Of a stretch of DNA of 64,000 nucleotides, positions 538-64,000 are shown piece by piece (positions within the stretch are counted from its first letter, which is position 1; the number at the start of each line of letters is the position of its first letter). Origin of the DNA: Octopus sinensis (Eukaryota). The stretch is from assembly GCF_006345805.1 (NCBI RefSeq), contig NC_043000.1:75702001-75766000 (forward strand), in the 5' to 3' direction. Position numbers and translations under genes: made by a program. A model generated the notes under the pieces. The model was not told where the DNA came from and ran no database searches. It worked only from the letters and a program-made list of their open reading frames with translations.

Positions 538-3500
538 CATCATCATCATCATCATCTTTTAACGTCAGCTTTCCATGCTAGCATGGATTGGACGATTTTG
601 ACTGAGGGCTGGCGAACCAGATGGCTGCACCAGGCTCCAATCTTGGTCTGGCAGAGTTTCTACAGCTGGATGCCCTTCCTAACGCCAACCACTCCGAGAG
701 TGTAATGTGTGCTTTTCACGTGTCACCGGCACGGGGCCAGTCAGGCAGTACTGGCAACGACCTTGCTCGAATCTTTTAATACATGCCACCAGCATCGGTG
801 CCAATAAGGCACGTGCAGATGGTGCTCTTGGCACCCTACTAGCATGAGCACAAGTACCAGTAAGGCAAGGCTGGTAACGATCACACTCACTCAAATAGTG
901 CCTTTTATGTGCCGCTGGCACGGAAGCCGGTTCGCCGCTCTGTCAACAATCACACTCGTATGGTGCTCATTGCACTCAACTAGCACGGATGCCAGTCATC
1001 GAATTTGATTTTGATTCTGATTTCACTTGCCTCAATAGGTCTTTGCAAGCAGAGTTTAGAGTCTAAAGAAGGAAAAGGTACGCATATGTGGGCTGGTTAT
1101 TCTCCTTACATAGGCCATGATGTTCTGGTCTCATTTGGCTTGCCAGATATTCTCGCAAAAGTCTCTACAAAAGTCTTGGTCACTAGTCATTTCCTTGGTG
1201 AGACCTAAAGTTTGAAGGTCGTGCTTCACCACTTTAGCCCAGGTCTTCCACAGGTTCCCTCAACTGCTAGGGTGTGGCACTTTTTCACATGGCTATCCTC
1301 ATCCATTCTTGCCACATGTCCATACCAGCACAGTCGTCTCTCTTGCACACCACATCTGATGCTTCTTAGGTCCAACTTTTCTCTCAAGGTACTTACACTC
1401 TGTTGAGTATGCACACTAACATTACACATCCATTGGATCATACTGGTTTTATTTGTTGCAAGCTTATACATGTCCTCAGCAGTCACAGTCCATGTTTCAC
1501 TGCCATGTAGCATGGCTGTTCGTACACATGCGTCATACAGTCTACCTTTTACTCTGAGCAAGAGGCCCTTTGTCACCAGCAGAGGTAAGAGCTCTGTGAA
1601 CTTTACCCAAGCTATTCTTATTCTAGCAACTACACTTTCAGCGCACCCTCCCCCGCTACTGACTTGGTCACCTAGGTAACAGAAGCTATAAACTACTTCT
1701 AGTTTTTCCCCTGGAATGTGGCGAAAGTTGTTCTCTGCGCATTTTCAGTGTTTATTGCTCTTGAGCATCTGCCACATACAAAACTATCTTCCCAGTTAGC
1801 CTTCCTTTGATATTACTGCACCTCTTATGTGTCCATAGCTTACACTGGGCACATTTTATAGAGTTTCTACCTATGCCTCTACTACAGATTGAGCAGGGCC
1901 ATCAAGCTGAAGGGATTTGTGGTTTGCCTGCCTTCCTACTTATTAGGACCTTGGTTTTAACTAGGTTGATTCTAAGGCCCTTCGATTCTAATCCTTGTTT
2001 CCACACTTGTAACTTCTCCTCTATTCCTGATAGTGACTCAGCAATTAGAGCAAGGTCATCAGCATAAAGGAGCTCCCAGGAGCATCCTGTCTTGAATTCC
2101 TCCGTTATTGCCTGGAGGACTATGATAAATTGGAGGGGGCAGAGGACTGAACCTTGGTGGACCCCTACCTCTACCCTGAATTCTTCTTTGTAGTCATTGC
2201 CAACCCTCACCTTACTGACAGCATCCCTGTACATGGCTTGCACAGCTCTCACTAACCATTCATCTATCCCTAGTTTCCTCATTGACCACCAGATTAGGGA
2301 TTGGGGGACCCTGTCAAAGGCTTTCTCCATGGCAACGAAAGCCAGGTACAGGGGCTTATCTTTGGCTAGGTATTTCTCCTGCAGCTGTCTTACCAGAAAT
2401 ATAACATCAGTGGTGCTTTTCCCTGGCACGAAACCAAACTGCATCTCTCTCCCTAATCAGTTGGGCTATGACCTTCTCCGTGACCCTCATTACCTATCCA
2501 ACAGCTTTATACTTCTATAATTATTTGTATCTAAAGTGTCACCTTTACCTTTGTAAAGCAGTTGACTATTATGCTGCTACACCAGTCATTGGGTATAACT
2601 CCTTCATGTATCACCTGGTTAACTATACGGGTGACTTGGCTATAGCCGACACTGCCAGATATTTTGAGCATCTCTGCAGTAATTCCTGTTTGGCCGGGGG
2701 CTTTCCCTGTCTTCATACTTTTAATTGCTTTATCTACCAAGGTACTGTCAACTCAGATAGCTGGTTCCTCTGTTGGGTCGACATTCAGCAGACTCTCTTT
2801 CTCCCATTCATTTTCTTTATTCAGCAACCTTTCATAGTGGCGTCTCCAAACCTCTCTCTTTTCAGCCTCATTTAGCGAAAGTGAACCATCATCCATGCGA
2901 ACACATTTCTCTCCTACAACATCACGTTTCTCTCACGAAATACCTCAAGTCTTTGGTCCTCATGGCACAGAACATTGGCAAATTTTTTCTTATCTGTCTC
3001 CCCTCTGGCTAAATAAACCTGCCTCCTAGCTTCCCTTCTGGCAGTCTGATACAATTCCCTGCTACCACCGTTCTTCCAGTCCTTCCAAGCCTGTTTCTTT
3101 CGTCTACTAGCCCTGTCAATAACATTGTTCCACCACCACGTTATTTTGGGTCGACAGGGGACTTTGCACCATCCACAGATCTGGTCGGTGGCCCTTAGCA
3201 GGTTGTCCCGTAGAAATCTCCAGTTGTCTTCTACACCATGTGAAGCTATATCCCCTTCTATTTCGTCAAAGGCTCCGAGTAATATGTCTCTAAATCTCTG
3301 TCCATTTGCAGAATCTTTAAGTTCCAGACCCTTCTTCTCCTTGCTGATCGTCTTCTGGGCATCATTTAGCCCTGATTCTAAAGTTACTTACTACCAGTCT
3401 ATGTTGTGGGGTACATTCTTCACCTGGGAAGGTTTTGGCATTTATAAGCAGCCATCTTCCCCTTTTTCTGGTGAGGATGTAGTCAATTTGACTAGTGTCT

Positions 3501-5559: not shown

Positions 5560-8100
5560 ACGTTCTCCATACTTTCAGAGCCCAGGTATTTAGCTTAGCC
5601 AAGGACTTAGAATTTCTGGGAAGATGCTGCAAAAAAAGAAAAAAAGAAAGAGCATATGGAGAGGACACTTCATTCTTGCTGTAACAGGTAAGGGAAACAA
5701 CATGGGAGTGGCAGATTACAGGTTATAAGGCATCCTTATTTGGTGAAGAGGGAAGTTGCCACAGGTCATCTTAGATGATGGGAGTGATTATTCAATTGCA
5801 CTGATCAGCTTACCACCCGTCTTAAACTGGGCAGTCCCCAATCAGTAAGGTGCTAATCCACCACGTCTATCCACTGCTAAGGGTGTATGGAGCTAGGACA
5901 AAAGCCAAAAAGCAGACGTAAAGCCCAGCACCTGGCAAAAGAGGAAGAAAATTGAAATTGACCCCATTGAAACTGGGGATCTGGAATGTCAGAACAATGA
6001 CAACCGGAATGGATATTACTGACCTAGACAAAACAGAGGACATCAGAAAAACGGCAATCATTGACAAGGACTTCACACGGCTGAATGTAGACATCACTGC
6101 CCTGCAAGAGACAAGTCTTGCTGACTCTGGTTCCATTAGGGAAAGAAATCACACATTTTTCTGGAAGGGTCTTGGGGAAGATAAGAGGAGAATCCATGGT
6201 GTGGGGTTCGCAGTCCACAACAGATTGCTGAACAAGATCAGTACTCCTCAAGGCATATCTGAGCGCATCACTATCATGGAAGTGAAGACTAAAACTGGAA
6301 GGGCCCATCTCATTAGTGCCTATGCCCGGATTCTAACAGCAGAAAATGAGAAGAAAGATCAGTTCTATGAGGAACTTCAGGATGTGATCAACAGTGTCTC
6401 AAGGGCAGACCAACTCTTTCTCATGGATGATTTCAATGCAAAGTAGGTGCTGATCACCAAGCATGGCCCAACTGCCTTGGACAGTTTGGACTACATTGCA
6501 AACACCTTCTACAATGGCAAAGACCAGCATAAAGTTTTTTGGTGTCATCCAAGATCAGGTCATTGGCACCAGATTGACTTCATCATCGTTAGAAAGAATG
6601 ATGTCAACACTGTGAAGTAAACAAGCTCCTTTCACAGTGCAGACTGTAACACAGATCATCTGTTGGTTATAGCCAAGGTAAAGATGGTCACAAAGAAAAT
6701 ACCAAGAGCCGAAAAACCAAAGAAACCTAAGATCAACACAAAAAACACCCAAGATCCAGCAATGAGAACCAAATTTCAAGAATATGTTGAAGAACAGCTC
6801 CTAAACTTAGATAGCTCATTCCCTGATGACATGTGGAACACGAAATCAGCAATATATGATTTTCTGACTAAGGCATTTGATACAGTCAGCAGATCAGGAC
6901 TGTACAGGGTGCTTGGAAAATGTGGCACTCCCCCAATACTGCTGCAGCTTATTGTTTCATTCCATGATGACATGAAGGCCACCATTCAGTTTGATGGTTT
7001 AATATCAGATAGCTTCAACATCAACAGCAGAGTAAAACAAGGTTGTGTCTTAGCACCAATCCTTTTCAGCATTTACTTTGCTGTATTGCTGCAGTATGCA
7101 TTTCAAGAGTTGCCAGGAGCTGTCTACCTTTGTTGGAGAACTGATGGGGCACTCTTTGATCTTTCTAGACTTCAGGCCAAGACCAAGATCAATAAAGCAA
7201 CAATAAGAGACTTTCTCTTTACCGACAATGCAGCACTTGTTGCTCACAGTGAATTAATTCTACAAATAATGATGGACCACCTATCATCAGCATGCAAGGC
7301 CTTTGGTTTGGTCATCAGTGTAAAGAAGACAGTCATCCTCACTCAAGAGGGTGCAGTGAAAGGCCATATCAAACTTGATGACAAAGAGCTTGATACAGTG
7401 GACAGGTTCTGCTATCTAGGATCTACCATTTCCTCTACTGCTTCACTTGATGATGAGATTAACGTCAGGATAAGGAAGGCTGACAAAACAAGCATGGAAG
7501 AACAAGAGATTAGACATTAAGAAAAAGATCAGGATTTATGAGGCATGTGTTCTCAGCACACTCCTCTATGGATCTGAAAGATGGACCTTGTACAGCAGAT
7601 AGGAAAGGTGCTTTGCCATTTTCCATCTCAGATGCCTCCACAAGATCTTAGGCCTAACATGGCACGATTAGGTCACCAATGTTGAAGTGCTGGCCCAGGT
7701 GAATCTTCAGAGCATGACAGCTCTCTTGTGTATGAGAAAACTGAGGTGGCTGGGGCATGTCAGGAGAATGGATGACCATCAAATCCTGAAGCAACTGCTC
7801 TATGGAGAACTGGCTCAGGGTAAGAGACCAAGACCAAAACTGAGGTACACGGACACTTGCAAAACTAGTTTGTCCAAGTGTGAGGTGGATGTTGGCACCT
7901 GGGAAGAGAGAGCTGAGGACAGAACAACATGGAGGACTGTGGTGAAGGAAGGAACTGCTTCCCTACAGAGCAGCTACAGAAACAAACAAGTTGAGAAGCG
8001 TCAGCAGCGAAAGGAAAACAATAGAAATGCAAAGCGCCAAGCCACCCTCTTGGTATGCAAGTACTGTAGCAGAAGCTGCAATAAAAGGAGCCTCTAATAT
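5560..8100 (+). mobile_element. Degraded RTE/BovB-like LINE with internal deletion
   Basis: APE ORF 5952-6446 (LGIWNVRT, ALQET, AYA, DFNAK); RT 6663-7520 (KAFDTV, VKQGCVLAPILF, FTDN for FADD, FCYLGS); C-terminus 7687-8097 (LRWLGHV, QLLYGEL, CKYC). 5' boundary approximate. Confidence 0.9.
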
Positions 8101-8550
8101 GTTTGATTAAGTGACCTCTAACTAAATTGACCGCCATCGGCGGTCTTTCCTCCTCTTCTTCTTCTTATGCTAAAACTTGAAAATCGCCATTACCATTACG
8201 ATTCTACAATTTAAATTCCCAATTCAACTTACTTTCTTCTTCAATTTCAACTCCCGGTCGATGCCCGCAGCAAGTTCTTAAAAATTTATCTTACTATTTT
8301 TATTTTTCCATACATAACGCGACATACATTCATTCGTTGTTACTACGTTTATTCATACATTGATAACTTGATTCGTCTTACCCATCTCTCTCACTACGAA
8401 AATTTAACCTTTTAGGCTACTTTCAAGCCTTCGCCATAACTTGATTTATCTTTCCTATCTCTCTCTCTACGAAATTTAACCTTAGGCTACCTCAAGCCGT
8501 AATCCCATCTTTCCCCATCTTTCCGCCATCGGCGGTGCGCCCGCCCCCCA

Positions 8551-8720
8551 CCCCCACCACCAATACCGATGAACACTGTTCTCACCCCCACCACCAATAC
8601 CGATGAACACTGTTCTCACCCCCACCACCAATACCGGTGAACACTGTTCTCACCGCCACCACCAATACCGGTGAACACTGTTCTCACCCCCACCACCAAT
8701 ACCAGTATACCCTGTTCTCA
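8551..8720 (+). repeat. Five tandem 34-bp repeats in the LINE 5' UTR
   Basis: Unit CCCCCACCACCAATACCGATGAACACTGTTCTCA starts at 8551, 8585, 8619, 8653 and 8687; no spacers. Confidence 0.95.
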
Positions 8721-9137
8721 CCATCTACACCGGATACGCCCTACTCCCTCCTCCTCCCCCCACTACCCCTTCTCCTCATATGCTTTCACTGTGAAAAGAC
8801 AAGCTGCTAGCGCCATAGCTCATCAACTGCCCACCGATCTTACGCTTCCTCCTGACACTGCCTCAATCCGACCATCCCCTTTTAGTACCCTCCCGCCTCG
8901 TAATATCCTACGTTTTTATTTCTTACGAACCTACACCAACCCTTCCTGCCATCGTTCCTCCTTACCCCAACCTTCCCCACTGGTTGCTCCCCTATATTAC
9001 CCGAACCCTCTACTATCTCTCCCTCTCTTTCACTGGTGAAACCTTTCTCAACTGGACCCCCCCCCCTCCCCAACTCAACTCTAGAATATCTGTATTTCTT
9101 TCCTCTACCTAATTACCTTACTCAGTGACGATAACGA

Positions 9138-12100
9138 ATGTCCACTGCTAACACCAGCTCCTGCCCACGGCGTGGTCAGGTTGGAAGAGAGATCAAAAGA
9201 AAAATACCACGAAAACTATCACCACCACAACAACCCTCCTCTTCTCAGGCGCCGAATCCCCCCCGTCCCCCCCACATCTCCTTCCCAGTTTTCAGAGTTG
9301 GCACTATCAATGTTGGTACATTGACAGGCAAGTCTAGTGAGATTGTAGAGATGCTAGAGAGAAGACAGGTTGATGTATGCTGCATACAAGAGGTAAGATG
9401 GAGAGATGCTTCGGCTAGGGTCCTCACGGGCAAGGCACTTAGGTACAAACTCTACTGGCAAGGTAACGCGGAAGGTGTAGGGGGTGTAGGCATTCTCCTT
9501 GCGGAGGAATGGGTGGATAAGGTCATAGAGGTTGTCAGGGTTTGTGATAGAGTGCTTAAGCTCAGGTTGGTCCTACAGAGTGGCACAGCTATGATTATCT
9601 CAGCCTATGCCCCACAAGCGGGACTACCAAATGATCAGAAGGACAACTTTTATGATACCCTTCTGCAGGCTACTTCAAAGACTAGTAACAAGGACCTCAT
9701 CTTTGTAGGTGGAGATTTTAATGGGCATGTTGGGCGGGAATCGGGTATCTTCACTGGGGTACATGGTGGCTATGGTATTGGCACCAGAAATGATGAGGGA
9801 ACTAGACTGCTGGAATTCTGTGATGCATGTAACCTTTCAATCTGCAACACTAACTTCAAGAAGCCAGTCTGCCACCTTATAACTTATCAGTCAGGAGACT
9901 CCGCTAGCCAAATAGACTTCATCCTCACCAGACAACGGGATGCAGGGTTGCTCTTGAATACAAAGACCCTCCCGGGTGAAGAATGTATCCCTCAGCATAG
10001 ACTAATCATCAGTGACTTTAAGCTTGAGGCCAGAAGGACTCCAAGAAACAAACCAATCCAGAAAAGAAGGATTTGGAGGCTAAAGAACCCTTCGCATGGT
10101 CAGAAATTTAGGGACATACTCATCAAGAAATTTGATGAGAGGGAGGAGGAGCTTCAGACGTCAGACATAGAAGGTAGCTGGGAATTCCTACGGGACAGCT
10201 TGCTGAGTGCCACAGACCAAGTCTGTGGATGGTGCAAAGTCCCTTCCAGACCTAGAATTACGTGGTGGTGGAATAGTGCAGTAGATAAAGCCATCTGTGA
10301 AAAGAGACGGGCCTGGAAAGCCTGGAAGGATGGGGGGGCAGCAGGGAACTGTACCAGATAGCCAAAAGGGAGGCTGGGCGGCAGGTATACATTGCCAAAG
10401 ATGTAGCAGAAAAGAAGAAGTTTGCCAATGTCCAGCATCGCGAGGATCAAAGAGCTGAAGTATTTCGGATTGCCAGACAGTGTGTCAGAGAAAATAGCGA
10501 TGTTATAGGAGAGAAATGTGTCCGCATGGATGATGGGGCACTTGCTTTTACTACTAGTGAAAAGAAAGAGGCTTGGAGAAGCCATTATGAAAGACTGCTG
10601 AATGAGGAGAATGAATGGGAGGAGGAGAGCCTGCCAAATGTTGACCCAGTAGAGGAACCAGCTACCCGAATAGACAGCTCCCTTGTAGATAAGGCAATTA
10701 AGGATATGAAACCAGGCAAAGCCCCTGGCCTGTCAGGAATCACTGCTGAGATGCTTAAAACAGCTGGCTATGTGGGCTATGCCATAGTCACCCGCATTGT
10801 AAACCAGGTAGTTCACAATGGAGTCATACCCAATGACTGGTGCAGCAGCACCATAGTCAACTGCTACAAGGGTAAGGGTGATGCTCTAGATAGAAATAAC
10901 TACAGAGGTATCAAACTGTTGGACCAGGTGATGAAGGTCTCAGAAAAGGTCATAACCAATCTCATTAGGGAGAGAATTTGTTTAGATGAAATGCAGTTCG
11001 GTTTTGTACCAGGTAGAAGCACCACTGATGCTATATTCCTGGTCCGACAACTGCAGGAGAAGTACCTAGCTAAAGATAAACCCCTCTACATAGCTTTTGT
11101 AGACTTGGAGAAAGCCTTTGACAGGGTTCCCCGTTCCCTTATCTGGTGGTCGATGCGGAAACTGGAGATTGAAGAATGGCTAATAAGGGCTGTACAGGCT
11201 CTATACAGAGAGGCTGTCAGCAAGGTTAGGATTGGCAACGAATATAGTGAAGAATTCCGGGTAGAAGTAGGTGTGCACCAGGCTCAGCCCTCAGTCCCCT
11301 TTTATTCATCATAGTCCTTCAGGCAATAACAGAGGAATTCAAAACGGGATGCCCCTGGGAGCTCCTCTATGCCGATGACCTAGCTCTCATAGCAGAATCA
11401 CTACCGGAACTAGAAGAGAAATTTCGGGTGTGGAAGCAAGGGTTGGAATCAAAGGGCCTTAGAATAAATGTAGCAAAGACCAAAGTATTAGTAAGCAGCA
11501 GAAGAGGTACTCAGCACACACCCCCTCGGGTAGGTGGCCCTGCTCAACCTGTAGGAAAGGTACAGGTAGAAACTCCATAAGATGCACCCAATGTAAGTTA
11601 TGGACACATAAGAGGTGCAGCAACATTAAAGGGAAATTAACAGATAAGATAGCTTTCATGTGCGGCAGATGCACAGGGACAATAGACACAACAGACACTC
11701 AGAAAACAGATTCCATCACACTCCAGGGAGAGAAACTAGAAGTAGTTGATAGTTTCCGCTACCTGGGTGACCAAGTTAGTAGCGGAGGTGGATGCACAGA
11801 GAGTATCACCACTAGAATACGAATAGCCTGGGCAAAGTTCAGAAAGCTCCTACCCCTACTGGCAACAAAAGGTCTCTCCCTCAGAGCAAAAGGTAGATTG
11901 TATGATGCATGTGTGCGAACTGCCATGCTTCACGGTAATGAAACATGGGCTGTGACTGCAGAAGACATGCGTAGACTTGAAAGAAATGAAGCTAGCATGA
12001 TCCGCTGGATGTGTAGTGTCAGTGTGCACGCAAGACAGAGTGTAAGCATCCTGAGAGAAATGCTGGATATAAGAAGCATCAGATGTGGTGTGCAAGAGCG

Positions 12101-26127: not shown

Positions 26128-26270
26128 TCATTCATCTTTGTTAACAGCAATACCATTGAGCACCTGATGGTCAGTACCATTCTCAGTCTTGGAGGCCAAC
26201 ATCTTTTGCCGCACTTCAAACACTTCTTGGATAGCTTTGCGGAAGCAGAGAAAGTTGTAGTTAATTATAC
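26128..26270 (-). CDS. RRAGC/D: Rag C/D GTPase, coding exon 8 (last): [23 protein letters not shown]...KDE*
   Basis: TTTTGAACAG acceptor, phase 1 matches exon 7; homologous to GLIDYNFHCFRKAIHEVF; TGA at 26128-26130. Confidence 0.93.
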
Positions 26271-28125: not shown

Positions 28126-28274
28126 CTTGTTTAATGAAGTTATCCTCACGTAAAATGCAAACAAGAGCCAAATATCTATTGACTTCCCGAAGGTATAAGA
28201 CTGTTGTGTTGTTTAGTTTGATGATTGATGCAGACTCATCATCAAATGCATTCAGTTCATTATCATCCTGTAAC
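28126..28274 (-). CDS. RRAGC/D: Rag C/D exon 7: (G)LQDDNELNAFDDESASIIKLNNTTVLYLREVNRYLALVCILREDNFIKQ
   Basis: AG acceptor, GTAAGA donor, 149 bp; roadblock-domain motif IIKLNNTTVLYL..V...LALVCILRE. Confidence 0.96.
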
Positions 28275-33319: not shown

Positions 33320-33434
33320 AGAGATGAGCATGTTCAGAAGGTTTTCCAATGTAGGTAGCTGAGGTATCAGTTTCTGGACCACTTTGCTGAATGCTTCAAA
33401 TATAGAGTGGTCATAGATACTGGTCAGATAGAAA
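33320..33434 (-). CDS. RRAGC/D: Rag C/D exon 5: (S)[38 protein letters not shown]
   Basis: CATACAG acceptor, GTAAGT donor, 115 bp; G5 motif TSIYD. Confidence 0.97.
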
Positions 33435-33926: not shown

Positions 33927-34126
33927 CTCAGGTAGATCCCTTCAAATCCAGCATCAACAAGATCATCATTAGCCCTCTGGTGAATATCTCGCTGAGATTC
34001 TATCTTTTGATCATCAGACAAGCTATCCACTTTATGAATGAATACCTCAAACTTGATTTCAGGGTTAATTTTATGTGCTCGGGTCACTGTCATATTTAGT
34101 TTGTCTAGCGCCTCCACATATTCATC
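33927..34126 (-). CDS. RRAGC/D: Rag C/D exon 4: [10 protein letters not shown]...[31 protein letters not shown]...GIYL
   Basis: TTTCCTAG acceptor, GTGAGA donor, 200 bp; G4 motif HKVD. Confidence 0.97.
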
Positions 34127-41683: not shown

Positions 41684-41817
41684 TTGTGCATCAATGACAA
41701 AAATCAAGGCACCACAACCACGAAATATTTTGTCGACATCAAATAGAGTATCAAAGAAATCTATGTGACCAGGCAAATCCCATACTTGGAATTGGACAAA
41801 TGAACTGTTAGAAATAT
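41684..41817 (-). CDS. RRAGC/D: Rag C/D exon 3: (D)[44 protein letters not shown]
   Basis: CACACAG acceptor, GTGAGT donor, 134 bp; G3 motif WDLPGH. Confidence 0.97.
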
Positions 41818-43410: not shown

Positions 43411-46400
43411 TGCTATAATTTAGGAACACCATAACATGATACCCATCTTGATACCAGGGCTCGCACTACAGGTTCAGCAGAAATATCACTTAGCGGAATG
43501 GCTTCAGGCAATATGAATGTGGCAGAAACGCACATCAGGAGTACTAAAAGTGCCAAAAGGGGCACAGATGTGCTTATGCACCTTCGACTTCTGGCATTGA
43601 AGGCAAGATTGGGTCCATTCAGTAATGTCGTGTTTCATATTTAGCTAAAAGAATCTATCCATTATGAGCTTTACTGAGACCAAGACTCCAGGTCTCAGTA
43701 AGACTGTCCAAAGCTTCCAATACAGCTCAACGATGGGTTCCTGGGATGAATGGATTATGCGAATCCATTGACACATCACACAAGATCTGCATGTCAACAG
43801 TTGGTAGAGGCAGTATTTGAATTTGCATGTTACAAATTCAGAAGATGTGTCGAGTCCAGAGGATAAAACAGTCAGGTCAATCTCAGAAGTAGATAACAAA
43901 GAATTCACTGGAAGGTGGGAAAATGCATCTGCAGCAATGTTCTGAGCTCCAGAGATATGCTGGATGTCACTGGTAAATTGAGATATGAAATCCAGGTGTC
44001 TAGTCTACCTCAGTGAATACTTTTTAGGCTTGGATCATAAGGCAAAAGTAAGAGGCTTATGATCAGTATAGATGATAAAGTTCCTCCCTTCGAGGATATG
44101 CTGGAAATGCTTCACCGAAAGGTAGATCACTAACAAATTTACGACCAAAGATGCTGTAATGAGTCTTGGCAGGTTTCAGCTGCTGAAAGAAAAAGGCAAG
44201 AGGTTGCAGGTGTCCTTCATGAAACTGTTGTAAAATGGCACCAACAGCTGTGTTCAACGCATCAACCACAAGCAAAAGCTTTGCATTGAAGACAGGGTGT
44301 ATGAGGAAAGATGCTTTAGCAAGTTCATGTTTAACAGTATCAAAAGCTTCCATCTGGACCAGAGTCAATGCAATAACTTCATTCTTCTTATGACAATACT
44401 TTAAGAGCTCAATAAGATGAGACAGAGGCTCAGCATAGCAAGGAATGAAACGGCTATAAAAATTTAGCAATCCAAGGCAGGCGAAGTGAAGGAGAAGGAG
44501 GAAGGTCCTCAATAGCCCACACTTTTTCTAGAAAAGGTTGAATACCCTCTTTGTCAATAATATGGCCAAGAAACACAAGAGAAGATGTGTCAGAAACACA
44601 TTTAGCAGGGTTAATCTGAACTTGAAATTGGTTTAGATGCTGGAAGAGCAGCTTTAAATGATGAACATGCTCTGCAGCTGAAGAACTGGCAATCAAGAGA
44701 TCATCGATATATGCATAGACAAAGTCCAGTCCACAAATGATTTCATCTATGCACCACTGAAATGTGCTGGCAACATTGTGAAGGCCAAATGGCAAAATTA
44801 AGAATTCAAAGGAGCCAAATGGGATTGTAACTGAGGTCTTCAGAACATCCTCAGGGTGAACAGGCATTTGGTGATAAGCCCTCATGAGATTGAGCTTGGA
44901 AAACACAGTACATCCAAGCGGTAGGGAAGCAAAATCCTGGAGAAGAGAAATTGAATACCTATCAGGAGTGGTGATAGCATTAAGACGTCTAACATTTACT
45001 GTAGGCCTAATCACCAGAGCACTTGGAGACCATGTGCAGGGGTGAGGCCCATTGGCTTGTGGAAGGGCGGATAATCTCGCACTCCAGCATGTGATCAAAT
45101 TCTGCCTTTGCTGCTTTGAGCATCTTCAGAGGCAGATGATGAGGACATGAAAACATTAGAGCACCATCCATAGAAATGAAATGTTTCATTGAGTCGGTAG
45201 AATTACCTAGCTGGAAACTCAGATTGGTGAGCTCTGGGTAAGAGTTTAAAAGCAATGTAAGTTTCCAGACACCGCAACAAAGAACGTTGGGATAACCAAT
45301 GAAATACTCAATTTTTGCCCCAAGATAGAAAAGTCCATAGTGCTGTCCGACAGCCACTGCTTATGAACATCAAGTATAAGAGAATAGTGGTGGAGAAAAT
45401 ACGCACCAAGGGTTTTGGGTAAGGCAGGTCAGCTATGATGGAAATCCATTTAAAATCACAAAGCAGAGCCAAATCCGAAAAAAGAGAGATTTGGCAGTAT
45501 GTCAGGATAGGTGAGTTGTTCACTGCTTGCAAGGTAATAGCAGAAAGAGGAGGTTTATCTTTAATGAATTTTACTGGCCAAATACTGCAAGCAGCACCAG
45601 AATTGACAAGGAAAAGTTTGTGCGATAATAAATCCTCAACAAAAAATACATGAGTATGATGGTACAAACTGGGAGTAGCTGTCATGCTCAGTGTCCTATG
45701 GTAGTGTTTACCTGACTCACATGAGAACACGGTTGAATGCATTTATGAGTAGCATCACCAAAACGTTTATGATACAAGCAGAATATTGAAGAAGCAAGAG
45801 AAAAAGAATGCCATGTAGGAGAGGACGAATGACTGAATGATCTTCGGTGTGTAAAATTCTGCGCAGCACATAATCTCTTCACCTCTTTAGTTAAATCAAG
45901 AATGGCTTGTAGAGTCGTCGATTGCACTGAATCAGCCTCAGAAGTAGCTGCTACTGTAGAAGGAGAAGAAAAAACAGCAGCATCTCTTGCCAGTATATTT
46001 TAATATCTTATTGGCTGAAGAAACCAACTGATCTACTGAACTGACCTCCATCATAGGAGCAAGGTTGGCCTGCACATTTGATGGCAAACAAGAGAAGAAA
46101 AACAGTTTAATCATGGAGTTGTCCTCAGATGATCCCTCAGTAATTTCCTGCATCCTGTGTAGGTGTTGGCTTGATATCCAGTCATCCATGTGTTCCTCGT
46201 TAACCAACATACGAAAGTATTTCCCTGCTGAAAGAGACATTCTATAGAGAACTCTATTCTTTATTGAAAAATAAGATGCATCCTTAAGTGGGTCTGTTAT
46301 AAGATCCTTCAAATGAACAGCTAATGAAGAAGGGATGGCACTCAGTAAAATATGTAGCTGTTGCTGCACCAAGTTAATATTATTTGCAGTAAAGTATCAC

Positions 46401-48369: not shown

Positions 48370-48464
48370 CATCTTTGACTATTTTGTTAGTGCTTTCAAG
48401 GAACAGGGTTTCATTTGGGGATACTTTATGAAACACAACTTTTTGTATGGAGGACTTGCCACTT
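48370..48464 (-). CDS. RRAGC/D: Rag C/D exon 2: (R)[31 protein letters not shown]
   Basis: TTTTCAG acceptor, GTGAGT donor, 95 bp; P-loop GLRRSGKS completed across the intron. Confidence 0.97.
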
Positions 48465-50005: not shown

Positions 50006-50145
50006 CTTCGAAGGCCCATCAACAGAATCCGTGGTTTTTCATCTGAACTTGAAGCTGTAGCTTCATTCTCCTGATCAACTGTACCATATCCAAAATCTTG
50101 GAATGAGCCAACCATAAAATCCCCACCAGCATCATCTTCATAGGA
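50006..50145 (-). CDS. RRAGC/D: Rag C/D exon 1 (first identified coding exon): SYEDDAGGDFMVGSFQDFGYG...EKPRILLMGLR
   Basis: CTTGCAG acceptor (phase 0), GTCAGT donor, 140 bp; DFGYG and KPRILLMGLRR are diagnostic of RagC/D. Start ATG must lie in an upstream exon. Confidence 0.95.
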
Positions 50146-52847
50146 CTGCAAGGTAAAAAGGAATCAAATATTTTGTAATATTGAATACAGAGAGTTTTCA
50201 AACAGGATTCAATTAGCAAAGGATAGATGTTTAATGAGGAGAGACAACACCAACAGGAGTGAAAAAGCTGGTGGTAAGTTAGATAAATTAGGTTAAATTA
50301 TTTAGTAAAATATGTATATAAGTCAAAATTAGTATCAGGTTTCAGTGTTTATGCTTCTAAGTTGTCCATTGTGTATCTGAGAACATCAAAGGACACAAGA
50401 AAGCAATGCTTACCTCTTGTTTCATAGAGTTAAGAGGACAAGTCACTTAATAAAATGCCAGACTATTAGAAGTTACTTTCCAGGTTTGGTAGCTATCCTA
50501 GAGAGCTAGGTAAATGTGGTTATGTAAAATTTTACTTAAAAGCAAAAACACTGCTGTGCATTTGATGCACTCAGTCTATCTCCACCAGTAGTAGACAGAT
50601 TGACTAGCATGAACACATTGAGTTTTGTGTTGTAAGTAACATCAAATGTCTGCAAGCAGAAGTATCTGTAAAACAATACTAGTAGATTAACTAGTTATAC
50701 ACTAAACAGCATATATTAGATATCAGAACCAATAATTGCTTATCTTACATGTAACACTATCAGTTCTACACTGTCGAATAAGCAGACAGAGCACATTAAC
50801 TTCAAGTGTGATTGGAAGCTTCATTTGGATATTTTTCTCAAAAATATCTTCTCCAATGTGTTAGGGAATTATTAATGTAAGGCCATAGTGTGCAAGTATC
50901 ACTAAAGCAGATGTATTAACATAATATACATTATGAATAAAAAAGATAGTCGAGGTAGTTGTTTAAATCAAAAGACAAAAAGGAACTTAGTTTTACTGTT
51001 AGTCTGAAGAGTTAATACTCAGTCTCTTCAGTTGAAGGAGAGAGATAATCAAATATTGTTAGTATGGTTAAGTGTTCTTGTACAGGTTTTTAGTGAGTAT
51101 GGAAACAACTCTACAAGGATTGGATAAATGTTAAAGAGCCTGAGAAGACACCTTAGATATAACAATGAATGAAGAGTCATAGAAATTGGGTGAACGTTAA
51201 ACAAGAGTGGTATAGAGTTTATAAGCTTAAAAGAGCAGTTGCTGCTGAAGTAGTTGGAAAGTTTGAGAAAGAATAGAGCTTAGAAATGGGTCAATGATTG
51301 TTAGTGAATTTGATTTGCCTGTTTATTCATTGGATTTTTTCCTTGGTTGTGGTTGAGACAATTTACATATTTTGAATCCAATAACTCAAATATATGTGGC
51401 CCGTATTTAAGTATGAGGAAGAGAGTTAGCAGTTAATCAAGGCCAACAACATTTTTTTTTTATCCTAAAGAAAATACTTAGTCTTTATGATGCAGTTTTG
51501 GCTATATAAGACATGGGATGGGAAGCGAGTGCTGAATTTGTCAGAGAATGTGCAAGATACTTTTTGTGTATGGTATTCCAGAAAGAATCAAACTAATGGT
51601 AAATTTCTGGAATTGTGAGATTATCTTGATAATGCTGATGTTATTTAACAGAGATGAATATTAATTCCAAAGTGACATTGTTCTAGGAAGTAGATTCTAG
51701 CCAAAATTTAATATAAGCAGAAACAAAATGAGATATACAACAAAGTGGCTTGATTAGGTGGAAATGTACATATAATTCCAAAGAAGAGGTGATTATGGCA
51801 ATGATAGGACACAATATATGGAGAGAAGATATTCCAATTAATCAAAAATGCTTGATATTTCAATATGCTGTCAAGGAGGCTGGTGACCAAAAGGAGTATA
51901 TCACTCTAGACTTGGTCTATTCTACCAATAATCTATGTTTTACCTGATAAACTAAGTGTGCTCAGAAAAAGACTGCAGAACCAATAAAAAAACATGGAAA
52001 TAGAGAACCAAAATAATTATCATCAACTAACTGTTCATATGATAAATGACTTCAACTTGAGATGCAACAGATTGATGGAGGGAACACAGGAATAATGATT
52101 AAATACCAGGCGCATTCTATTTTGTATTTTAAGTTCTATTCTATCAAGATACATTTACAAATAATGTTACAGACATAGCTTACCAGATATTCTAAATTAA
52201 AATCAACAAATTATATAACTTAGTACATCTATTGAAAAGATTTCAGAAATCAGTGGGGTCCCCAGCCAGTAACTGACAAAAGGAATAACTATCGGTATAA
52301 GCTACAAGTATTAGTAGTACTACTAGATATAGGCAAGTATGATAAATCAATACAAAACAAAACACACAGATTTAAATACTTTAGAGTACACTGTTATCAG
52401 AAGACAGCTGTTTATTCACAAACATCTTACCTTATTGAGAGCAAAAAAACAGTAACACTTGTTATTCATATTCAAAATTGAAATTAATAAGTCTACCATG
52501 TTGAGAGGAACTCACAACAAAATAGTGTTGCTGTGAGTATGCTTTAAAGGAGTGGGTTATATTTACAAATAAAGCACTGCAGACTAAAATAAACATCACA
52601 TTTTACTGAAAGGTTATAAAATCTCATGAGAAATATTTCAAAAAATCAAACAAAAACGATAAAACAAAAAAATAGCTCCAGAAGACCTGCTAAGATATCA
52701 TCCAGTGAAACAGTTGTCACACATATATAAGATGATCTACAATACTGAATTTTTTAAAAAACAAACTTACAGACAAACAAAAAAAGAACTCATAAGCAGA
52801 ACAAACAAGTTAGAGAACTGTGAACACAGTCTGCTAACTATTTACAA

Positions 52848-59417: not shown

Positions 59418-60817
59418 ATCATCATCACCATCGTTTAGAGTCCGCTTTCCATGCTAGCATGGGTTGGACGGTGCAACTGGGGTCTGGGAAGCCAGAAGGC
59501 TGCACCAGGCCCAGTCTGATCTGGCAATGTTTCTACAGCTGGATGCCCTTCCTAACGCCAACCACTCCATGAATGTAGTGTGTACTTTTTACGTGCCACC
59601 GGCACAGGTGCCAGATGAGGCTGGCAAACGGCCACGATCGGATGGTGCTTTTTACGTGCCACCGGCATGGAGGCCAGGCAAACGGCCAAGATCGGATGGT
59701 GCTTTTTACGTGCCACTGGCATGGAGGCCAGGTGAGGCTGGCAACGGCCACGATCGGATGGTGCTTTTTACGTGCCACCGGCACAGAAGCCAGTCGGAGC
59801 GGCGCTGGCAACGGCCACGTTCGGATGGTTCTCTTATGTGCCACCAGTACTGGTATCACAGCTACAATTTCCATTCATGTTGATCGATTTTGATTTTTGA
59901 TTTTGATTTTCACAAGTAGAGTTTTGTGTCCCAAGAAGGAAAGGTATGCATCAGTGGACTGAGGCCATGGGTTATGGTCTCACTTGTCCTGCCGGGTCTT
60001 CTCACGCACAGCATACTTTCAAAGATCTCTGTCTCTAGTCATTTCCTCAGTGAGACCTAAAGTACGAAGGTTGTGCTTCACCACCTCATCCCAGGTTTTC
60101 CTGGGTCTGCCTCTTCCACAGGTTCCCTCAACAGCTAGGGTGTGGCACTTTTTCACACAACTATCTTCATCCATTCTCGCCACATGGCCATACCAGCGCA
60201 AATGTCTCTCTTGCACACCGCAACTGATGCTTCTTAGGTCCGACTTCTCTCTCAAGGTACTTACACTCTGTCGAGCATGAACACTGACATTATACATCCA
60301 TCGGAGCATACTGGCTTCATTTCTTGCGAGCTTACGCATATCCTCAGCAGTCACGGCCCATGTTTCACTGCCATGTAGCATGGCTGTTCATACACATGCA
60401 TCATACAGTCTGCCTTTTACTCTGAGTGAGAGGCCTTTTGTCACCAGCAGAGGTAAGAGCTCTCTGAACTTTGCCCAAGCTATTCTTACTCTAGCAGTTA
60501 CACTTTCAACACACCTGCCCCCGCTACTGACTTGGTCACCTAGGTAACGGAAACTATCAACTATTTCTAGTTTTTCTCCCTGGAATGTGGCGGAAGTTGC
60601 TCTCTGCGCATTTTCAGTGTTTATTGCTCCTGAGCATCTGCCACATACAAAAACTATCTTCCTAGTTAGCCTTCCTTTGACGTTGCTGCACCTCTTATGT
60701 GTCCATAGCTTACACTTGGTGCATCTTATGGTGCATCTTATAGAGTTTCTACCTACGCCTTTCCTACAGATCGAGCAAGGCCATCTACCTGAAGGCGTTT
60801 GTGACTTGTCTACCTTC
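59418..60817 (-). mobile_element. 5'-truncated RTE LINE (PHD family), 3' portion
   Basis: ORFs 60388-60855 and 60019-60381; 3' UTR with repeated modules; (CAT)n tail at 59418; 12-bp duplication giving IRCTIRCT. Confidence 0.93.
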
Positions 60818-61300
60818 GGAAAGTGTGACAACTTCCTTGGGGAAACCCTAGGCATCGACGAAGATGAACTGACAAGTCTATTCCAGAGGACTTCCCAGTT
60901 AGGGACTGTTATGGATAATTTCCAGATGTCTTTGGTCTGGCAGTGCTACCGGGGTGTGCTACTGGTTCAAGATAAACTCTACAGGCTAGATGGGTTTGTC
61001 TGAGGTGATTGCAGAGTGACAAAACCATTCTGCATGCACTCGTTCAGTGTCTGAGCATTGTTGACTTGTGGAGTTATGTTGAACAGATGCTATTGCATGT
61101 GGGATGGATCCATCTGTCAGCCAAGTCCATAATGATGATTTCTCCACCGCCCTCCTTTAATCAAGCAGGAAAGGCAGTTTTCCTTTGTTCGGTAGCAGTG
61201 GTGAAAGAGGTTGTCTGATGGACGAGGCTGAAAGGAATGAGGACAGAAACATTCCTCTTTAGTAAAGCCCTCAACTTTTTCAAGTTTCACTTAAAAAGGA
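60818..61300 (-). mobile_element. Unassigned TE fragment with weak Penelope RT-like motifs
   Basis: Minus frame GGGEIIIMD and RVYLEPVAHPGSTARPKTSGNYP loosely resemble DKGG..V.MD and FY.LPK.HK.G.P.RP..SG. Confidence 0.35.
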
Positions 61301-63926: not shown

Positions 63927-64000
63927 ATCTTCAGGGAGGCTGATCTCCCTTTGCAGGCTGGCAAGGACACCGAGATGGTGTCAGCCCTTCTGGTGATGTT

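What the first reader, a model, noticed from the sequence alone, without database searches (positions are those of the whole stretch)
41765..41767. RagC/D switch-II catalytic Gln replaced by His (WDLPGH instead of WDFPGQ)
Seen: exon 3 reads TGG GAT TTG CCT GGT CAC. Established: this position is Gln in human RagC (Q120) and RagD (Q121), where Q-to-L is the standard GTP-locked mutant. RagC/D must be GDP-bound, via the FLCN-FNIP GAP, to activate mTORC1 and recruit TFEB-type substrates. His occupies the equivalent site in translational GTPases such as EF-Tu. A-to-I editing cannot restore Gln (CAC gives CGC, Arg). Neighbouring residues also diverge (DTLFDVDK vs DPTFDYEM). Inference: nutrient signalling through this Rag may be rewired in this lineage.
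Basis: partly seen in the sequence, partly recalled or inferred. Interest (0 to 1): 0.7.

Follow-up and report, generated by a model that had tools for sequence, protein, structure and literature searches.

The report
RagC/D GTPase with catalytic histidine
An intact nutrient-sensing RagC/D GTPase gene really does carry histidine where the textbook catalytic glutamine sits, but unrelated animal-type assemblies carry and conserve the same swap, so it is most likely a working variant and not lineage-specific rewiring.

Summary
Window 41765-41767 reads GTG on the + strand, which is CAC (His) on the minus strand, inside TGG GAT TTG CCT GGT CAC (WDLPGH). The exon belongs to an intact, canonically spliced RagC/D orthologue (minus strand 50145-26128, 8 coding exons found, 372 aa). 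It matches human RagC at E 1.7e-167, and the His aligns with Q120. Every other nucleotide-binding motif is intact, and the window holds no alternative Gln exon.

The His is rare but not unique. In two profile searches, 8 of 121 non-redundant RagC/D exon fragments carry His and 109 carry Gln. A third, His-seeded search added 11 more His fragments. They fall into at least six sequence groups with different intron architectures. The His codon (CAC/CAT) and the neighbouring Leu codon vary synonymously, and dS is saturated, so His is old and held by selection.

His is the native catalytic residue at this site in Sar1 (DLGGH), SRβ (DLPGH) and the translational GTPases. A working catalytic swap is therefore the best reading. 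However, KRAS Q61H is hydrolysis-impaired, so altered kinetics remain possible. "Rewired signalling" is untested. I could not identify the organism. Interest is modest.

The parts
41765..41767 (-). His codon CAC at the switch-II (G3) catalytic position, equivalent to human RagC Q120
41774..41776 (-). Leu codon TTG three residues before the His (human RagC has Phe here). Together they give DLPGH.
   Evidence: Leu accompanies His in 7 of the 8 His fragments from the first two searches.
50006..50145 (-). Coding exon (SYEDD...KPRILLMGLRR) with the start of the P-loop. The acceptor ttgcag|TCC is conserved in related loci. The ATG lies in an upstream exon that was not located.
48370..48464 (-). Coding exon with the P-loop GKS and switch I ([31 protein letters not shown])
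41684..41817 (-). Coding exon with the G3 motif and switch II ([45 protein letters not shown]). This is the exon of the finding.
33927..34126 (-). Coding exon with the G4 motif HKVD
33320..33434 (-). Coding exon ([11 protein letters not shown]...): G5 region and start of the C-terminal domain
28126..28274 (-). Coding exon of the C-terminal domain
26128..26270 (-). Last coding exon, ending in the stop codon TGA

Best explanation
The window holds a functional single-copy-type RagC/D (yeast Gtr2) orthologue. Its switch-II catalytic Gln has been replaced by His, and the Phe three residues upstream by Leu, giving DLPGH. The substitution is real, old and kept by purifying selection. It has arisen or been retained in several other lineages too. 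The most likely mechanism is inferred, not shown: His takes over the role of Gln. It would orient the attacking water and stabilise the transition state next to the FLCN Arg164 finger, as His does natively in Sar1 (DLGGH, with the Sec23 GAP), SRβ (DLPGH) and the translational GTPases (DxPGH). On this reading the GTP-to-GDP cycle that licenses mTORC1/TFEB signalling is retained, perhaps with shifted kinetics, and is not abolished or rewired.
For: Identity and integrity:
- Eight GT-AG exons give a 1119-nt in-frame CDS.
- The protein matches human RagC at E 1.7e-167, against about 1e-15 for RagA.
- Pfam Gtr1_RagA scores 273 bits.
- P-loop GLRRSGKSS, switch-I LESTNK, G3 Asp and G4 HKVD are all intact.
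- Only one exon-3-like sequence exists in the 64 kb: E 2.9e-29, with the next best at 0.65.

Not an error or a one-off:
- His occurs in P0001, P0043, P0054, P0088, P0097, P0108 and P0092.
- A His-seeded search added 11 more.
- These come from different samples and genome architectures. Introns are 6.5-7.5 kb in the window, 1-3 kb in L003-L005 and about 50-105 bp in L001 and L006. L007 has no intron between exons 2 and 3.

Selection:
- The His codon is CAC or CAT, and the Leu codon is TTG, TTA, CTA or CTT.
- L003 and L004 differ at 28 synonymous codons and 1 non-synonymous codon out of 63, and dS is saturated in all pairs.

Precedent:
- PDB sequences confirm FDLGGH in Sar1 and IDLPGH in SRβ.
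- Sar1 His79 corresponds to Ras Gln61, and H79G lowers GAP-stimulated hydrolysis (PMC2150902).
- FLCN supplies an Arg finger to RagC (PMC9473554).
- Changing L to F and H to Q in silico moves GTP_EFTU from 25.2 to 20.0 bits and Gtr1_RagA from 212 to 216 bits.
Against: There are no biochemical data for any His-type RagC/D. His is not generically tolerated at this site: KRAS Q61H impairs both intrinsic and GAP-mediated hydrolysis (PMC8560773). The window's switch-II helix carries further rare substitutions, which could mean relaxed or altered function of this region. One His-bearing clade also replaces the switch-I Thr (human T96) by Asn. This hints that in some lineages the RagC/D GTPase chemistry is being remodelled and not simply conserved. 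I could not exclude a second, Gln-bearing RagC/D gene elsewhere in the genome.
Confidence: 0.6

Rival explanations
1. His weakens GTP hydrolysis, as Q61H does in KRAS. RagC/D in this lineage would then be biased towards GTP or depend on another route to the GDP state, such as lower GTP affinity or a modified GAP. Nutrient signalling to mTORC1/TFEB would be re-tuned.
For: KRAS Q61H impairs intrinsic and GAP-mediated hydrolysis (PMC8560773). The window's switch-II helix has rare residues: Leu25 in 1/120, Val28 in 2/120, Thr24 in 8/120. In three groups (window, P0001/P0043, P0054/88/97/108) His comes with Leu at -3, and in the last two also with Tyr at +3. Fisher tests give p = 4e-7 and 1.5e-6, without correction for phylogeny. 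That pattern would fit compensatory remodelling. A separate His clade also changes the switch-I Thr.
Against: A GTP-locked RagC is dominant-inhibitory in the established model. Long-term retention of His in several old lineages, with every other G motif and the dimerisation domain conserved, argues for a working cycle. Sar1 and SRβ show that His works with an external GAP. His also occurs with Phe at -3 in 12 fragments, so the Leu is not obligatory.
Confidence: 0.25
2. The His copy is a diverged paralogue. A conventional Gln-bearing RagC/D elsewhere in the genome does the canonical job.
For: Only 64 kb of the genome was available. The window's G domain is somewhat faster-evolving than relatives: exon 4 is 64-76% identical to others. 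L003 shows extra partial copies of RagC/D exon pieces.
Against: The gene is intact, and its C-terminal domain is very close to human RagC (about 89% identity in one exon). Invertebrates typically have one RagC/D gene (background knowledge). No Gln exon 3 lies in the window. None of the 146 fragments retrieved is a close Gln-bearing relative of the window's exon; the best is P0003 at 84%, with 36 of 63 codons differing synonymously.
Confidence: 0.08
3. Sequencing or assembly error: the true codon is CAA or CAG.
For: It is a single-base difference, and reads were not available.
Against: The same His, with both CAC and CAT codons, is found at the homologous codon in independent assemblies from at least six samples. 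In the window it is accompanied by the Leu found in three of the other groups.
Confidence: 0.02

Closest known systems
Human RagC / RagD (RRAGC, RRAGD) and yeast Gtr2
   Same: Same family and domain order: a Gtr1_RagA G domain plus a C-terminal roadblock domain. The alignment to human RagC covers 315 residues at E 1.7e-167, and Gtr2 scores 1e-89 to 1e-124. The P-loop, switch-I Thr, G3 Asp and G4 HKVD are identical or conservative.
   Different: The switch-II catalytic Gln (Q120/Q121/Q66) is His, the preceding Phe is Leu, and the switch-II helix reads DTLFDVDK instead of DPTFDYEM.
Sar1 (COPII GTPase)
   Same: Native His at the same G3 position (DLGGH). His79 corresponds to Ras Gln61 and is needed for GAP (Sec23)-stimulated hydrolysis (PMC2150902). 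The GAP supplies an Arg finger (background knowledge), as FLCN does for RagC.
   Different: A different family: the window's protein scores only 25 bits against Pfam Arf. Sar1 has no roadblock domain or heterodimer, and has Gly-Gly where this protein has Pro-Gly.
SRβ (signal recognition particle receptor β)
   Same: An identical pentapeptide, DLPGH, at G3. The window's G domain gives a marginal Pfam SRPRB hit of 26.6 bits against a cut-off of 25.
   Different: The Gln revertant scores almost the same against SRPRB (25.7 bits). The resemblance is therefore general G-domain similarity plus a convergent motif, not membership.
Translational GTPases (EF-Tu family, DxPGH)
   Same: Same DxPGH G3 motif with a catalytic His (background knowledge). 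The Pfam GTP_EFTU score rises from 20.0 to 25.2 bits because of the Leu and His.
   Different: The score is below the family cut-off of 26.5 bits. In that family hydrolysis is triggered by the ribosome, not by an Arg-finger GAP.
KRAS Q61H (oncogenic mutant)
   Same: The same Gln-to-His change at the homologous residue.
   Different: In KRAS it is a somatic loss of hydrolysis (PMC8560773). Here it is a germline state conserved over saturated synonymous divergence.

Membership tests
RagC/D (Gtr2) subfamily of Rag GTPases | Gtr1/RagA-type G domain (Pfam PF04670) | tested here: met
   273.1 bits, E 2.2e-81, full-length match to profile positions 1-232
RagC/D (Gtr2) subfamily of Rag GTPases | Closer to RagC/D/Gtr2 than to RagA/B/Gtr1 | tested here: met
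   Human RagC 1.7e-167, RagD G domain 7e-94 and Gtr2 1e-89 to 3e-124, against RagA/Gtr1 at about 1e-15 to 1e-16
RagC/D (Gtr2) subfamily of Rag GTPases | C-terminal roadblock (dimerisation) domain | tested here: met
   The alignment runs through human RagC residue 370. The isolated RagC C-terminal-domain chains 6ehr_G and 5x6v_G match at about 1e-66.
RagC/D (Gtr2) subfamily of Rag GTPases | Intact P-loop, switch-I Thr, G3 Asp and Rag-type G4 (HKVD) | tested here: met
   GLRRSGKSS, LESTNK, WD and HKVD are all present in the spliced product
RagC/D (Gtr2) subfamily of Rag GTPases | Switch-II catalytic Gln (RagC Q120 / RagD Q121 / Gtr2 Q66; PMC5618229) | tested here: not met
   His (CAC) at this position. 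The residue is Gln in 109 of 121 fragments. This residue is a conserved feature and not what delimits the family, so orthology stands.
RagC/D (Gtr2) subfamily of Rag GTPases | Heterodimer with RagA/B, FLCN-FNIP GAP sensitivity and Ragulator binding | not testable with these tools
   Needs biochemistry. The partner genes are not in the window.
His-type G3 GTPases (Sar1, SRβ, EF-Tu-like) | DxxGH G3 motif with catalytic His | tested here: met
   The window has DLPGH. PDB chains show Sar1 FDLGGH and SRβ IDLPGH. This is a motif-level match only.
His-type G3 GTPases (Sar1, SRβ, EF-Tu-like) | Family-level sequence membership | tested here: not met
   SRPRB 26.6, Arf 25.2 and GTP_EFTU 25.0 bits, against 273 bits for Gtr1_RagA. 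The protein works like these families at one residue, by inference, but is not a member.

The most novel reading that the evidence does not exclude
Animal RagC/D has swapped its catalytic Gln for His repeatedly, in at least six sequence groups. In some the change comes with Phe-to-Leu at -3, and in one clade with loss of the switch-I Thr. These His forms might hydrolyse GTP by a changed mechanism, for example a protonation-dependent (pH-sensitive) or differently GAP-gated step at the lysosomal surface. The FLCN-RagC/D-TFEB branch would then be tuned differently in these lineages, including the one in the window.
Probability: 0.2. Interest if true: 0.6.

Novelty: new variant of a known kind. 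Interest (0 to 1): 0.35.

Why it matters
RagC/D Q120 is treated as an invariant catalytic residue, and Q120L is the field's standard 'GTP-locked' tool. Natural, selected His variants give a ready-made test of what that residue does in FLCN-stimulated hydrolysis. They also test whether the Rag cycle tolerates the Sar1/SRβ/EF-Tu solution. If the His forms are fully active, the finding is a curiosity that refines the family's motif definition to DxPG[QH]. If they are slow or differently gated, it points to lineage-specific tuning of the TFEB branch of mTORC1 signalling. Either way, the His alone is not evidence of rewiring.

Tried and rejected
- Organism identification failed. Rfam found nothing in the window. 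The other long ORFs are LINE-type endonuclease and reverse-transcriptase fragments. The protein collections carry no taxon labels, and the related contigs are ENA or Logan metagenome or run assemblies known only by accession.
- The ATG exon was not found. tblastx of the upstream 14 kb against upstream regions of five related loci gave only AT-repeat hits. Scans for ATG followed by a donor gave no convincing candidate. The conserved acceptor before 'SY(E/D)' suggests an exon carrying only the 5'UTR plus ATG, possibly beyond the window.
- An alternative, mutually exclusive Gln exon 3 in the long introns was rejected.
- Single versus multiple origin of His could not be resolved. Nearest-neighbour identities on the 45-aa exon, with the two sites masked, place each His group next to Gln sequences, but resolution is too low. 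dS is saturated, so dating is impossible.
- Literature searches for a prior report of a His-type RagC/D, or for the DLPGH motif, found nothing relevant.
- Leu-His covariation as an obligatory coupling was rejected: 12 His fragments have Phe.
- Structure prediction was not run. The tools return no inter-residue geometry, and orthology was already decisive.

Full report
**1. The observation**

On the + strand, window 41765-41767 is GTG. The gene is on the minus strand, where the codon is CAC. The surrounding minus-strand sequence reads TGG GAT TTG CCT GGT CAC, which is W-D-L-P-G-H. The exon spans 41817-41684, with acceptor cacacag| and donor |gtgagt.

**2. What the gene is**

Inspection of the splice sites followed. 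Together they gave eight minus-strand exons:

| Exon | Coordinates (minus strand) |
|---|---|
| 1 | 50145-50006 |
| 2 | 48464-48370 |
| 3 | 41817-41684 |
| 4 | 34126-33927 |
| 5 | 33434-33320 |
| 6 | 30051-29909 |
| 7 | 28274-28126 |
| 8 | 26270-26128 |

- All exons are flanked by AG/GT, and they join into a 1119-nt in-frame CDS of 372 aa ending in TGA.
- The first of these exons begins at a strong acceptor (ttgcag|TCC TAT GAA).
- The same acceptor before 'SY(E/D/G)' is present in five related loci. The ATG therefore lies in a small upstream exon, which I could not find.
- Against all PDB chains, the product matches human RagC at E 1.7e-167 over residues 56-370.
- It matches the RagD G domain at 7e-94 and yeast Gtr2 at 1e-89 to 3e-124. 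It matches RagA/Gtr1 only at about 1e-15.
- Pfam Gtr1_RagA scores 273 bits.
- The printed alignment puts the His opposite human Q120.
- A review lists Gtr2 Q66 = RagC Q120 = RagD Q121 as the residue that 'stabilizes the transition state' (PMC5618229).
- The P-loop (GLRRSGKSS), switch I ([11 protein letters not shown]), the G3 Asp, G4 (HKVD) and the whole C-terminal roadblock domain are conserved.
- An HMM of exon 3 run over all six frames found only this one exon (E 2.9e-29, next best 0.65). There is no alternative Gln-encoding exon in the window.
- The rest of the window consists mostly of LINE-type endonuclease and reverse-transcriptase fragments, one of them inside a RagC/D intron.

**3. 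How unusual the His is**

The large protein collection holds RagC/D only as exon-sized ORF fragments called on eukaryotic contigs. It carries no taxon labels.

- The window's exon peptide alone retrieved 28 fragments.
- A profile of those retrieved 140, of which 120 were listed.
- Counting the window, 109 of 121 have Gln and 8 have His.
- Of the remaining four, two have Asp and two are irregular.
- The His-bearing fragments from these two searches are P0001, P0043, P0054, P0088, P0097, P0108 and P0092.
- A third search was seeded with the His sequences, so it cannot be used for frequencies. It added P0128, P0139 and a diverse clade: P0129, P0130, P0131, P0133, P0134, P0138, P0140, P0141 and P0142. 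P0132 belongs to that clade and has Asn at the site.

By sequence, the His fragments fall into at least six groups:

| Group | Members | Motif |
|---|---|---|
| 1 | the window | WDLPGH |
| 2 | P0001, P0043 | WDLPGH |
| 3 | P0054, P0088, P0097, P0108 | WDLPGH |
| 4 | the P0092 clade | FPGH |
| 5 | P0128 | WDFPGH |
| 6 | P0139 | WDFPGH |

I fetched the contigs for six His fragments and four Gln fragments.

- The loci rebuilt over several exons (L002-L006, L008, L009) share the window's exon boundaries.
- Their genome architectures differ greatly. Introns are 6.5-7.5 kb in the window, 1-3 kb in L003-L005 and about 50-105 bp in L001 and L006.
- L007 has no intron between exons 2 and 3.

**4. Is it real and selected?**

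- Across the His loci the codon is CAC (window, L001, L003) or CAT (L004-L007).
- The neighbouring Leu is TTG, TTA, CTA or CTT.
- Over 63 aligned codons, L003 and L004 differ at 28 synonymous codons and 1 non-synonymous codon.
- dS is saturated or incalculable for every pair.

The His state is therefore old and is maintained by purifying selection in several lineages. This makes an assembly error in the window very unlikely, although reads were not available.

In the first two searches, 7 of the 8 His fragments have Leu at -3 and 6 of 8 have Tyr at +3. The Fisher p values are 4e-7 and 1.5e-6, not corrected for phylogeny. However, DLPGQ exists in seven Gln fragments, and 12 His fragments keep Phe. 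The coupling is lineage-bound, not obligatory.

The window's own switch-II helix is unusually diverged:

- Leu25 is seen in 1 of 120 other fragments.
- Val28 is seen in 2 of 120.
- Thr24 is seen in 8 of 120.

The closest exon in the collection is P0003 (WDIPGQ, 84% identity). Even there, 36 of 63 codons differ synonymously. No close relative of the source species was available, and the change cannot be dated.

**5. Mechanism**

Shown:

- FLCN-FNIP is the RagC GAP and supplies the Arg164 finger (PMC9473554).
- His is the native residue at the same G3 position in Sar1 (FDLGGH) and SRβ (IDLPGH), as read from PDB sequences.
- Sar1 His79 corresponds to Ras Gln61 and Arf1 Gln71, and H79G lowers Sec23/24-stimulated hydrolysis (PMC2150902).
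- Translational GTPases use DxPGH (background knowledge).
- Replacing Leu and His by Phe and Gln in silico drops the Pfam GTP_EFTU score from 25.2 to 20.0 bits. It raises Gtr1_RagA from 212 to 216 bits. SRPRB hardly changes (26.9 versus 25.7 bits).

The motif has therefore converged on the His-type G3, while the protein remains a RagC/D.

Inferred: His substitutes for Gln in positioning the attacking water and stabilising the transition state beside the FLCN Arg finger, so the GTPase cycle is retained.

The main counter-argument is that KRAS Q61H impairs both intrinsic and GAP-mediated hydrolysis (PMC8560773). I rate it at about 0.25.

Long-term conservation of His together with every other functional motif argues against a dead GTPase. 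In the established model a GTP-locked RagC would block the TFEB branch.

**6. Comparison and membership**

By every sequence criterion tested, the gene is a RagC/D orthologue. It fails only the 'catalytic Gln' feature. That feature is a conserved residue and not what delimits the family.

At one residue it resembles Sar1, SRβ and EF-Tu. It is not a member of those families. Their Pfam scores are 25-27 bits, at or below the cut-offs, against 273 bits for Gtr1_RagA.

**7. Novelty and verdict**

Full-text searches found no report of a natural His-type RagC/D. That is weak negative evidence.

I class this as a new variant of a known kind.

The identity and the rarity are right.
- Interest is modest (0.35). 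A specialist would be mildly surprised and would gain a natural experiment on the role of Q120. The simplest reading, though, is a conservative catalytic swap with good precedent.
- I could not identify the organism.

Noticed in passing
P0092, P0129-P0134, P0138, P0140-P0142 (L007 for P0092): A diverse, fast-evolving RagC/D clade with FPGH (one member has FPGN). In most members the switch-I Mg-coordinating Thr (human RagC T96, 'LESTNK') is also Asn ('IGSNNS'). Counts are 7 Asn+His, 1 Asn+Asn and 2 Thr+His. Two catalytic-site changes together suggest a more deeply remodelled RagC/D in an unidentified lineage.
   Followed up: partly
L003 12360-12440, 17792-17851, 17966-18025, 19928-19987: This His-bearing locus lies on a 1.69 Mb ENA contig. 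It carries extra partial copies of RagC/D exon pieces: the 3' half of exon 4, and three extra copies of 'KLIPQLSTLENLLNILIS'. They lie downstream of the genuine exons.
   Followed up: no
window 50146-50157 (minus strand) and L002, L003, L004, L008, L009: A conserved splice acceptor sits immediately before the 'SY(E/D/G)' codons. This implies a tiny upstream first coding exon, possibly just the ATG. It was not found in the window and may lie beyond position 64000.
   Followed up: partly
window 1902-2444 (-), 5952-7520 (+), 9138-11314 (+), 44454-45098 (-): Fragments of non-LTR retrotransposons (Exo_endo_phos endonuclease and RVT_1 reverse transcriptase). The one at 44454-45098 sits inside the intron between RagC/D exons 2 and 3. 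The higher-GC region 1-13 kb is largely made of such elements.
   Followed up: partly
window 8549-8722 and 59623-59845: Tandem repeats: a 34-bp unit in 5.1 copies (95% match), and a 54-62-bp GC-rich unit in about 2.7 copies. The second lies in the GC-richer block at 58-62 kb, upstream of the RagC/D exons.
   Followed up: no
window 60388-60855 (-): A 155-aa ORF with a weak, sub-threshold PHD-finger match (20 bits against a cut-off of 24). It could be an exon of a neighbouring gene, part of a mobile element, or chance.
   Followed up: no
L001 1-160: The first ~160 bases of this 565-bp metagenome contig are GC-rich, unlike the AT-richer RagC/D exon and intron that follow. The contig may be chimeric. 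The His exon itself is clean and has canonical splice sites.
   Followed up: no
P0025, P0110, P0144; P0107: Other non-Gln states occur at the same site in RagC/D fragments. Asp occurs as WDFPGD or WDCPGD with 'FDFxD' or 'IDFDD' after it. One fragment has an insertion (WDLPGSDHVN). The position is therefore not absolutely invariant across eukaryotes.
   Followed up: no
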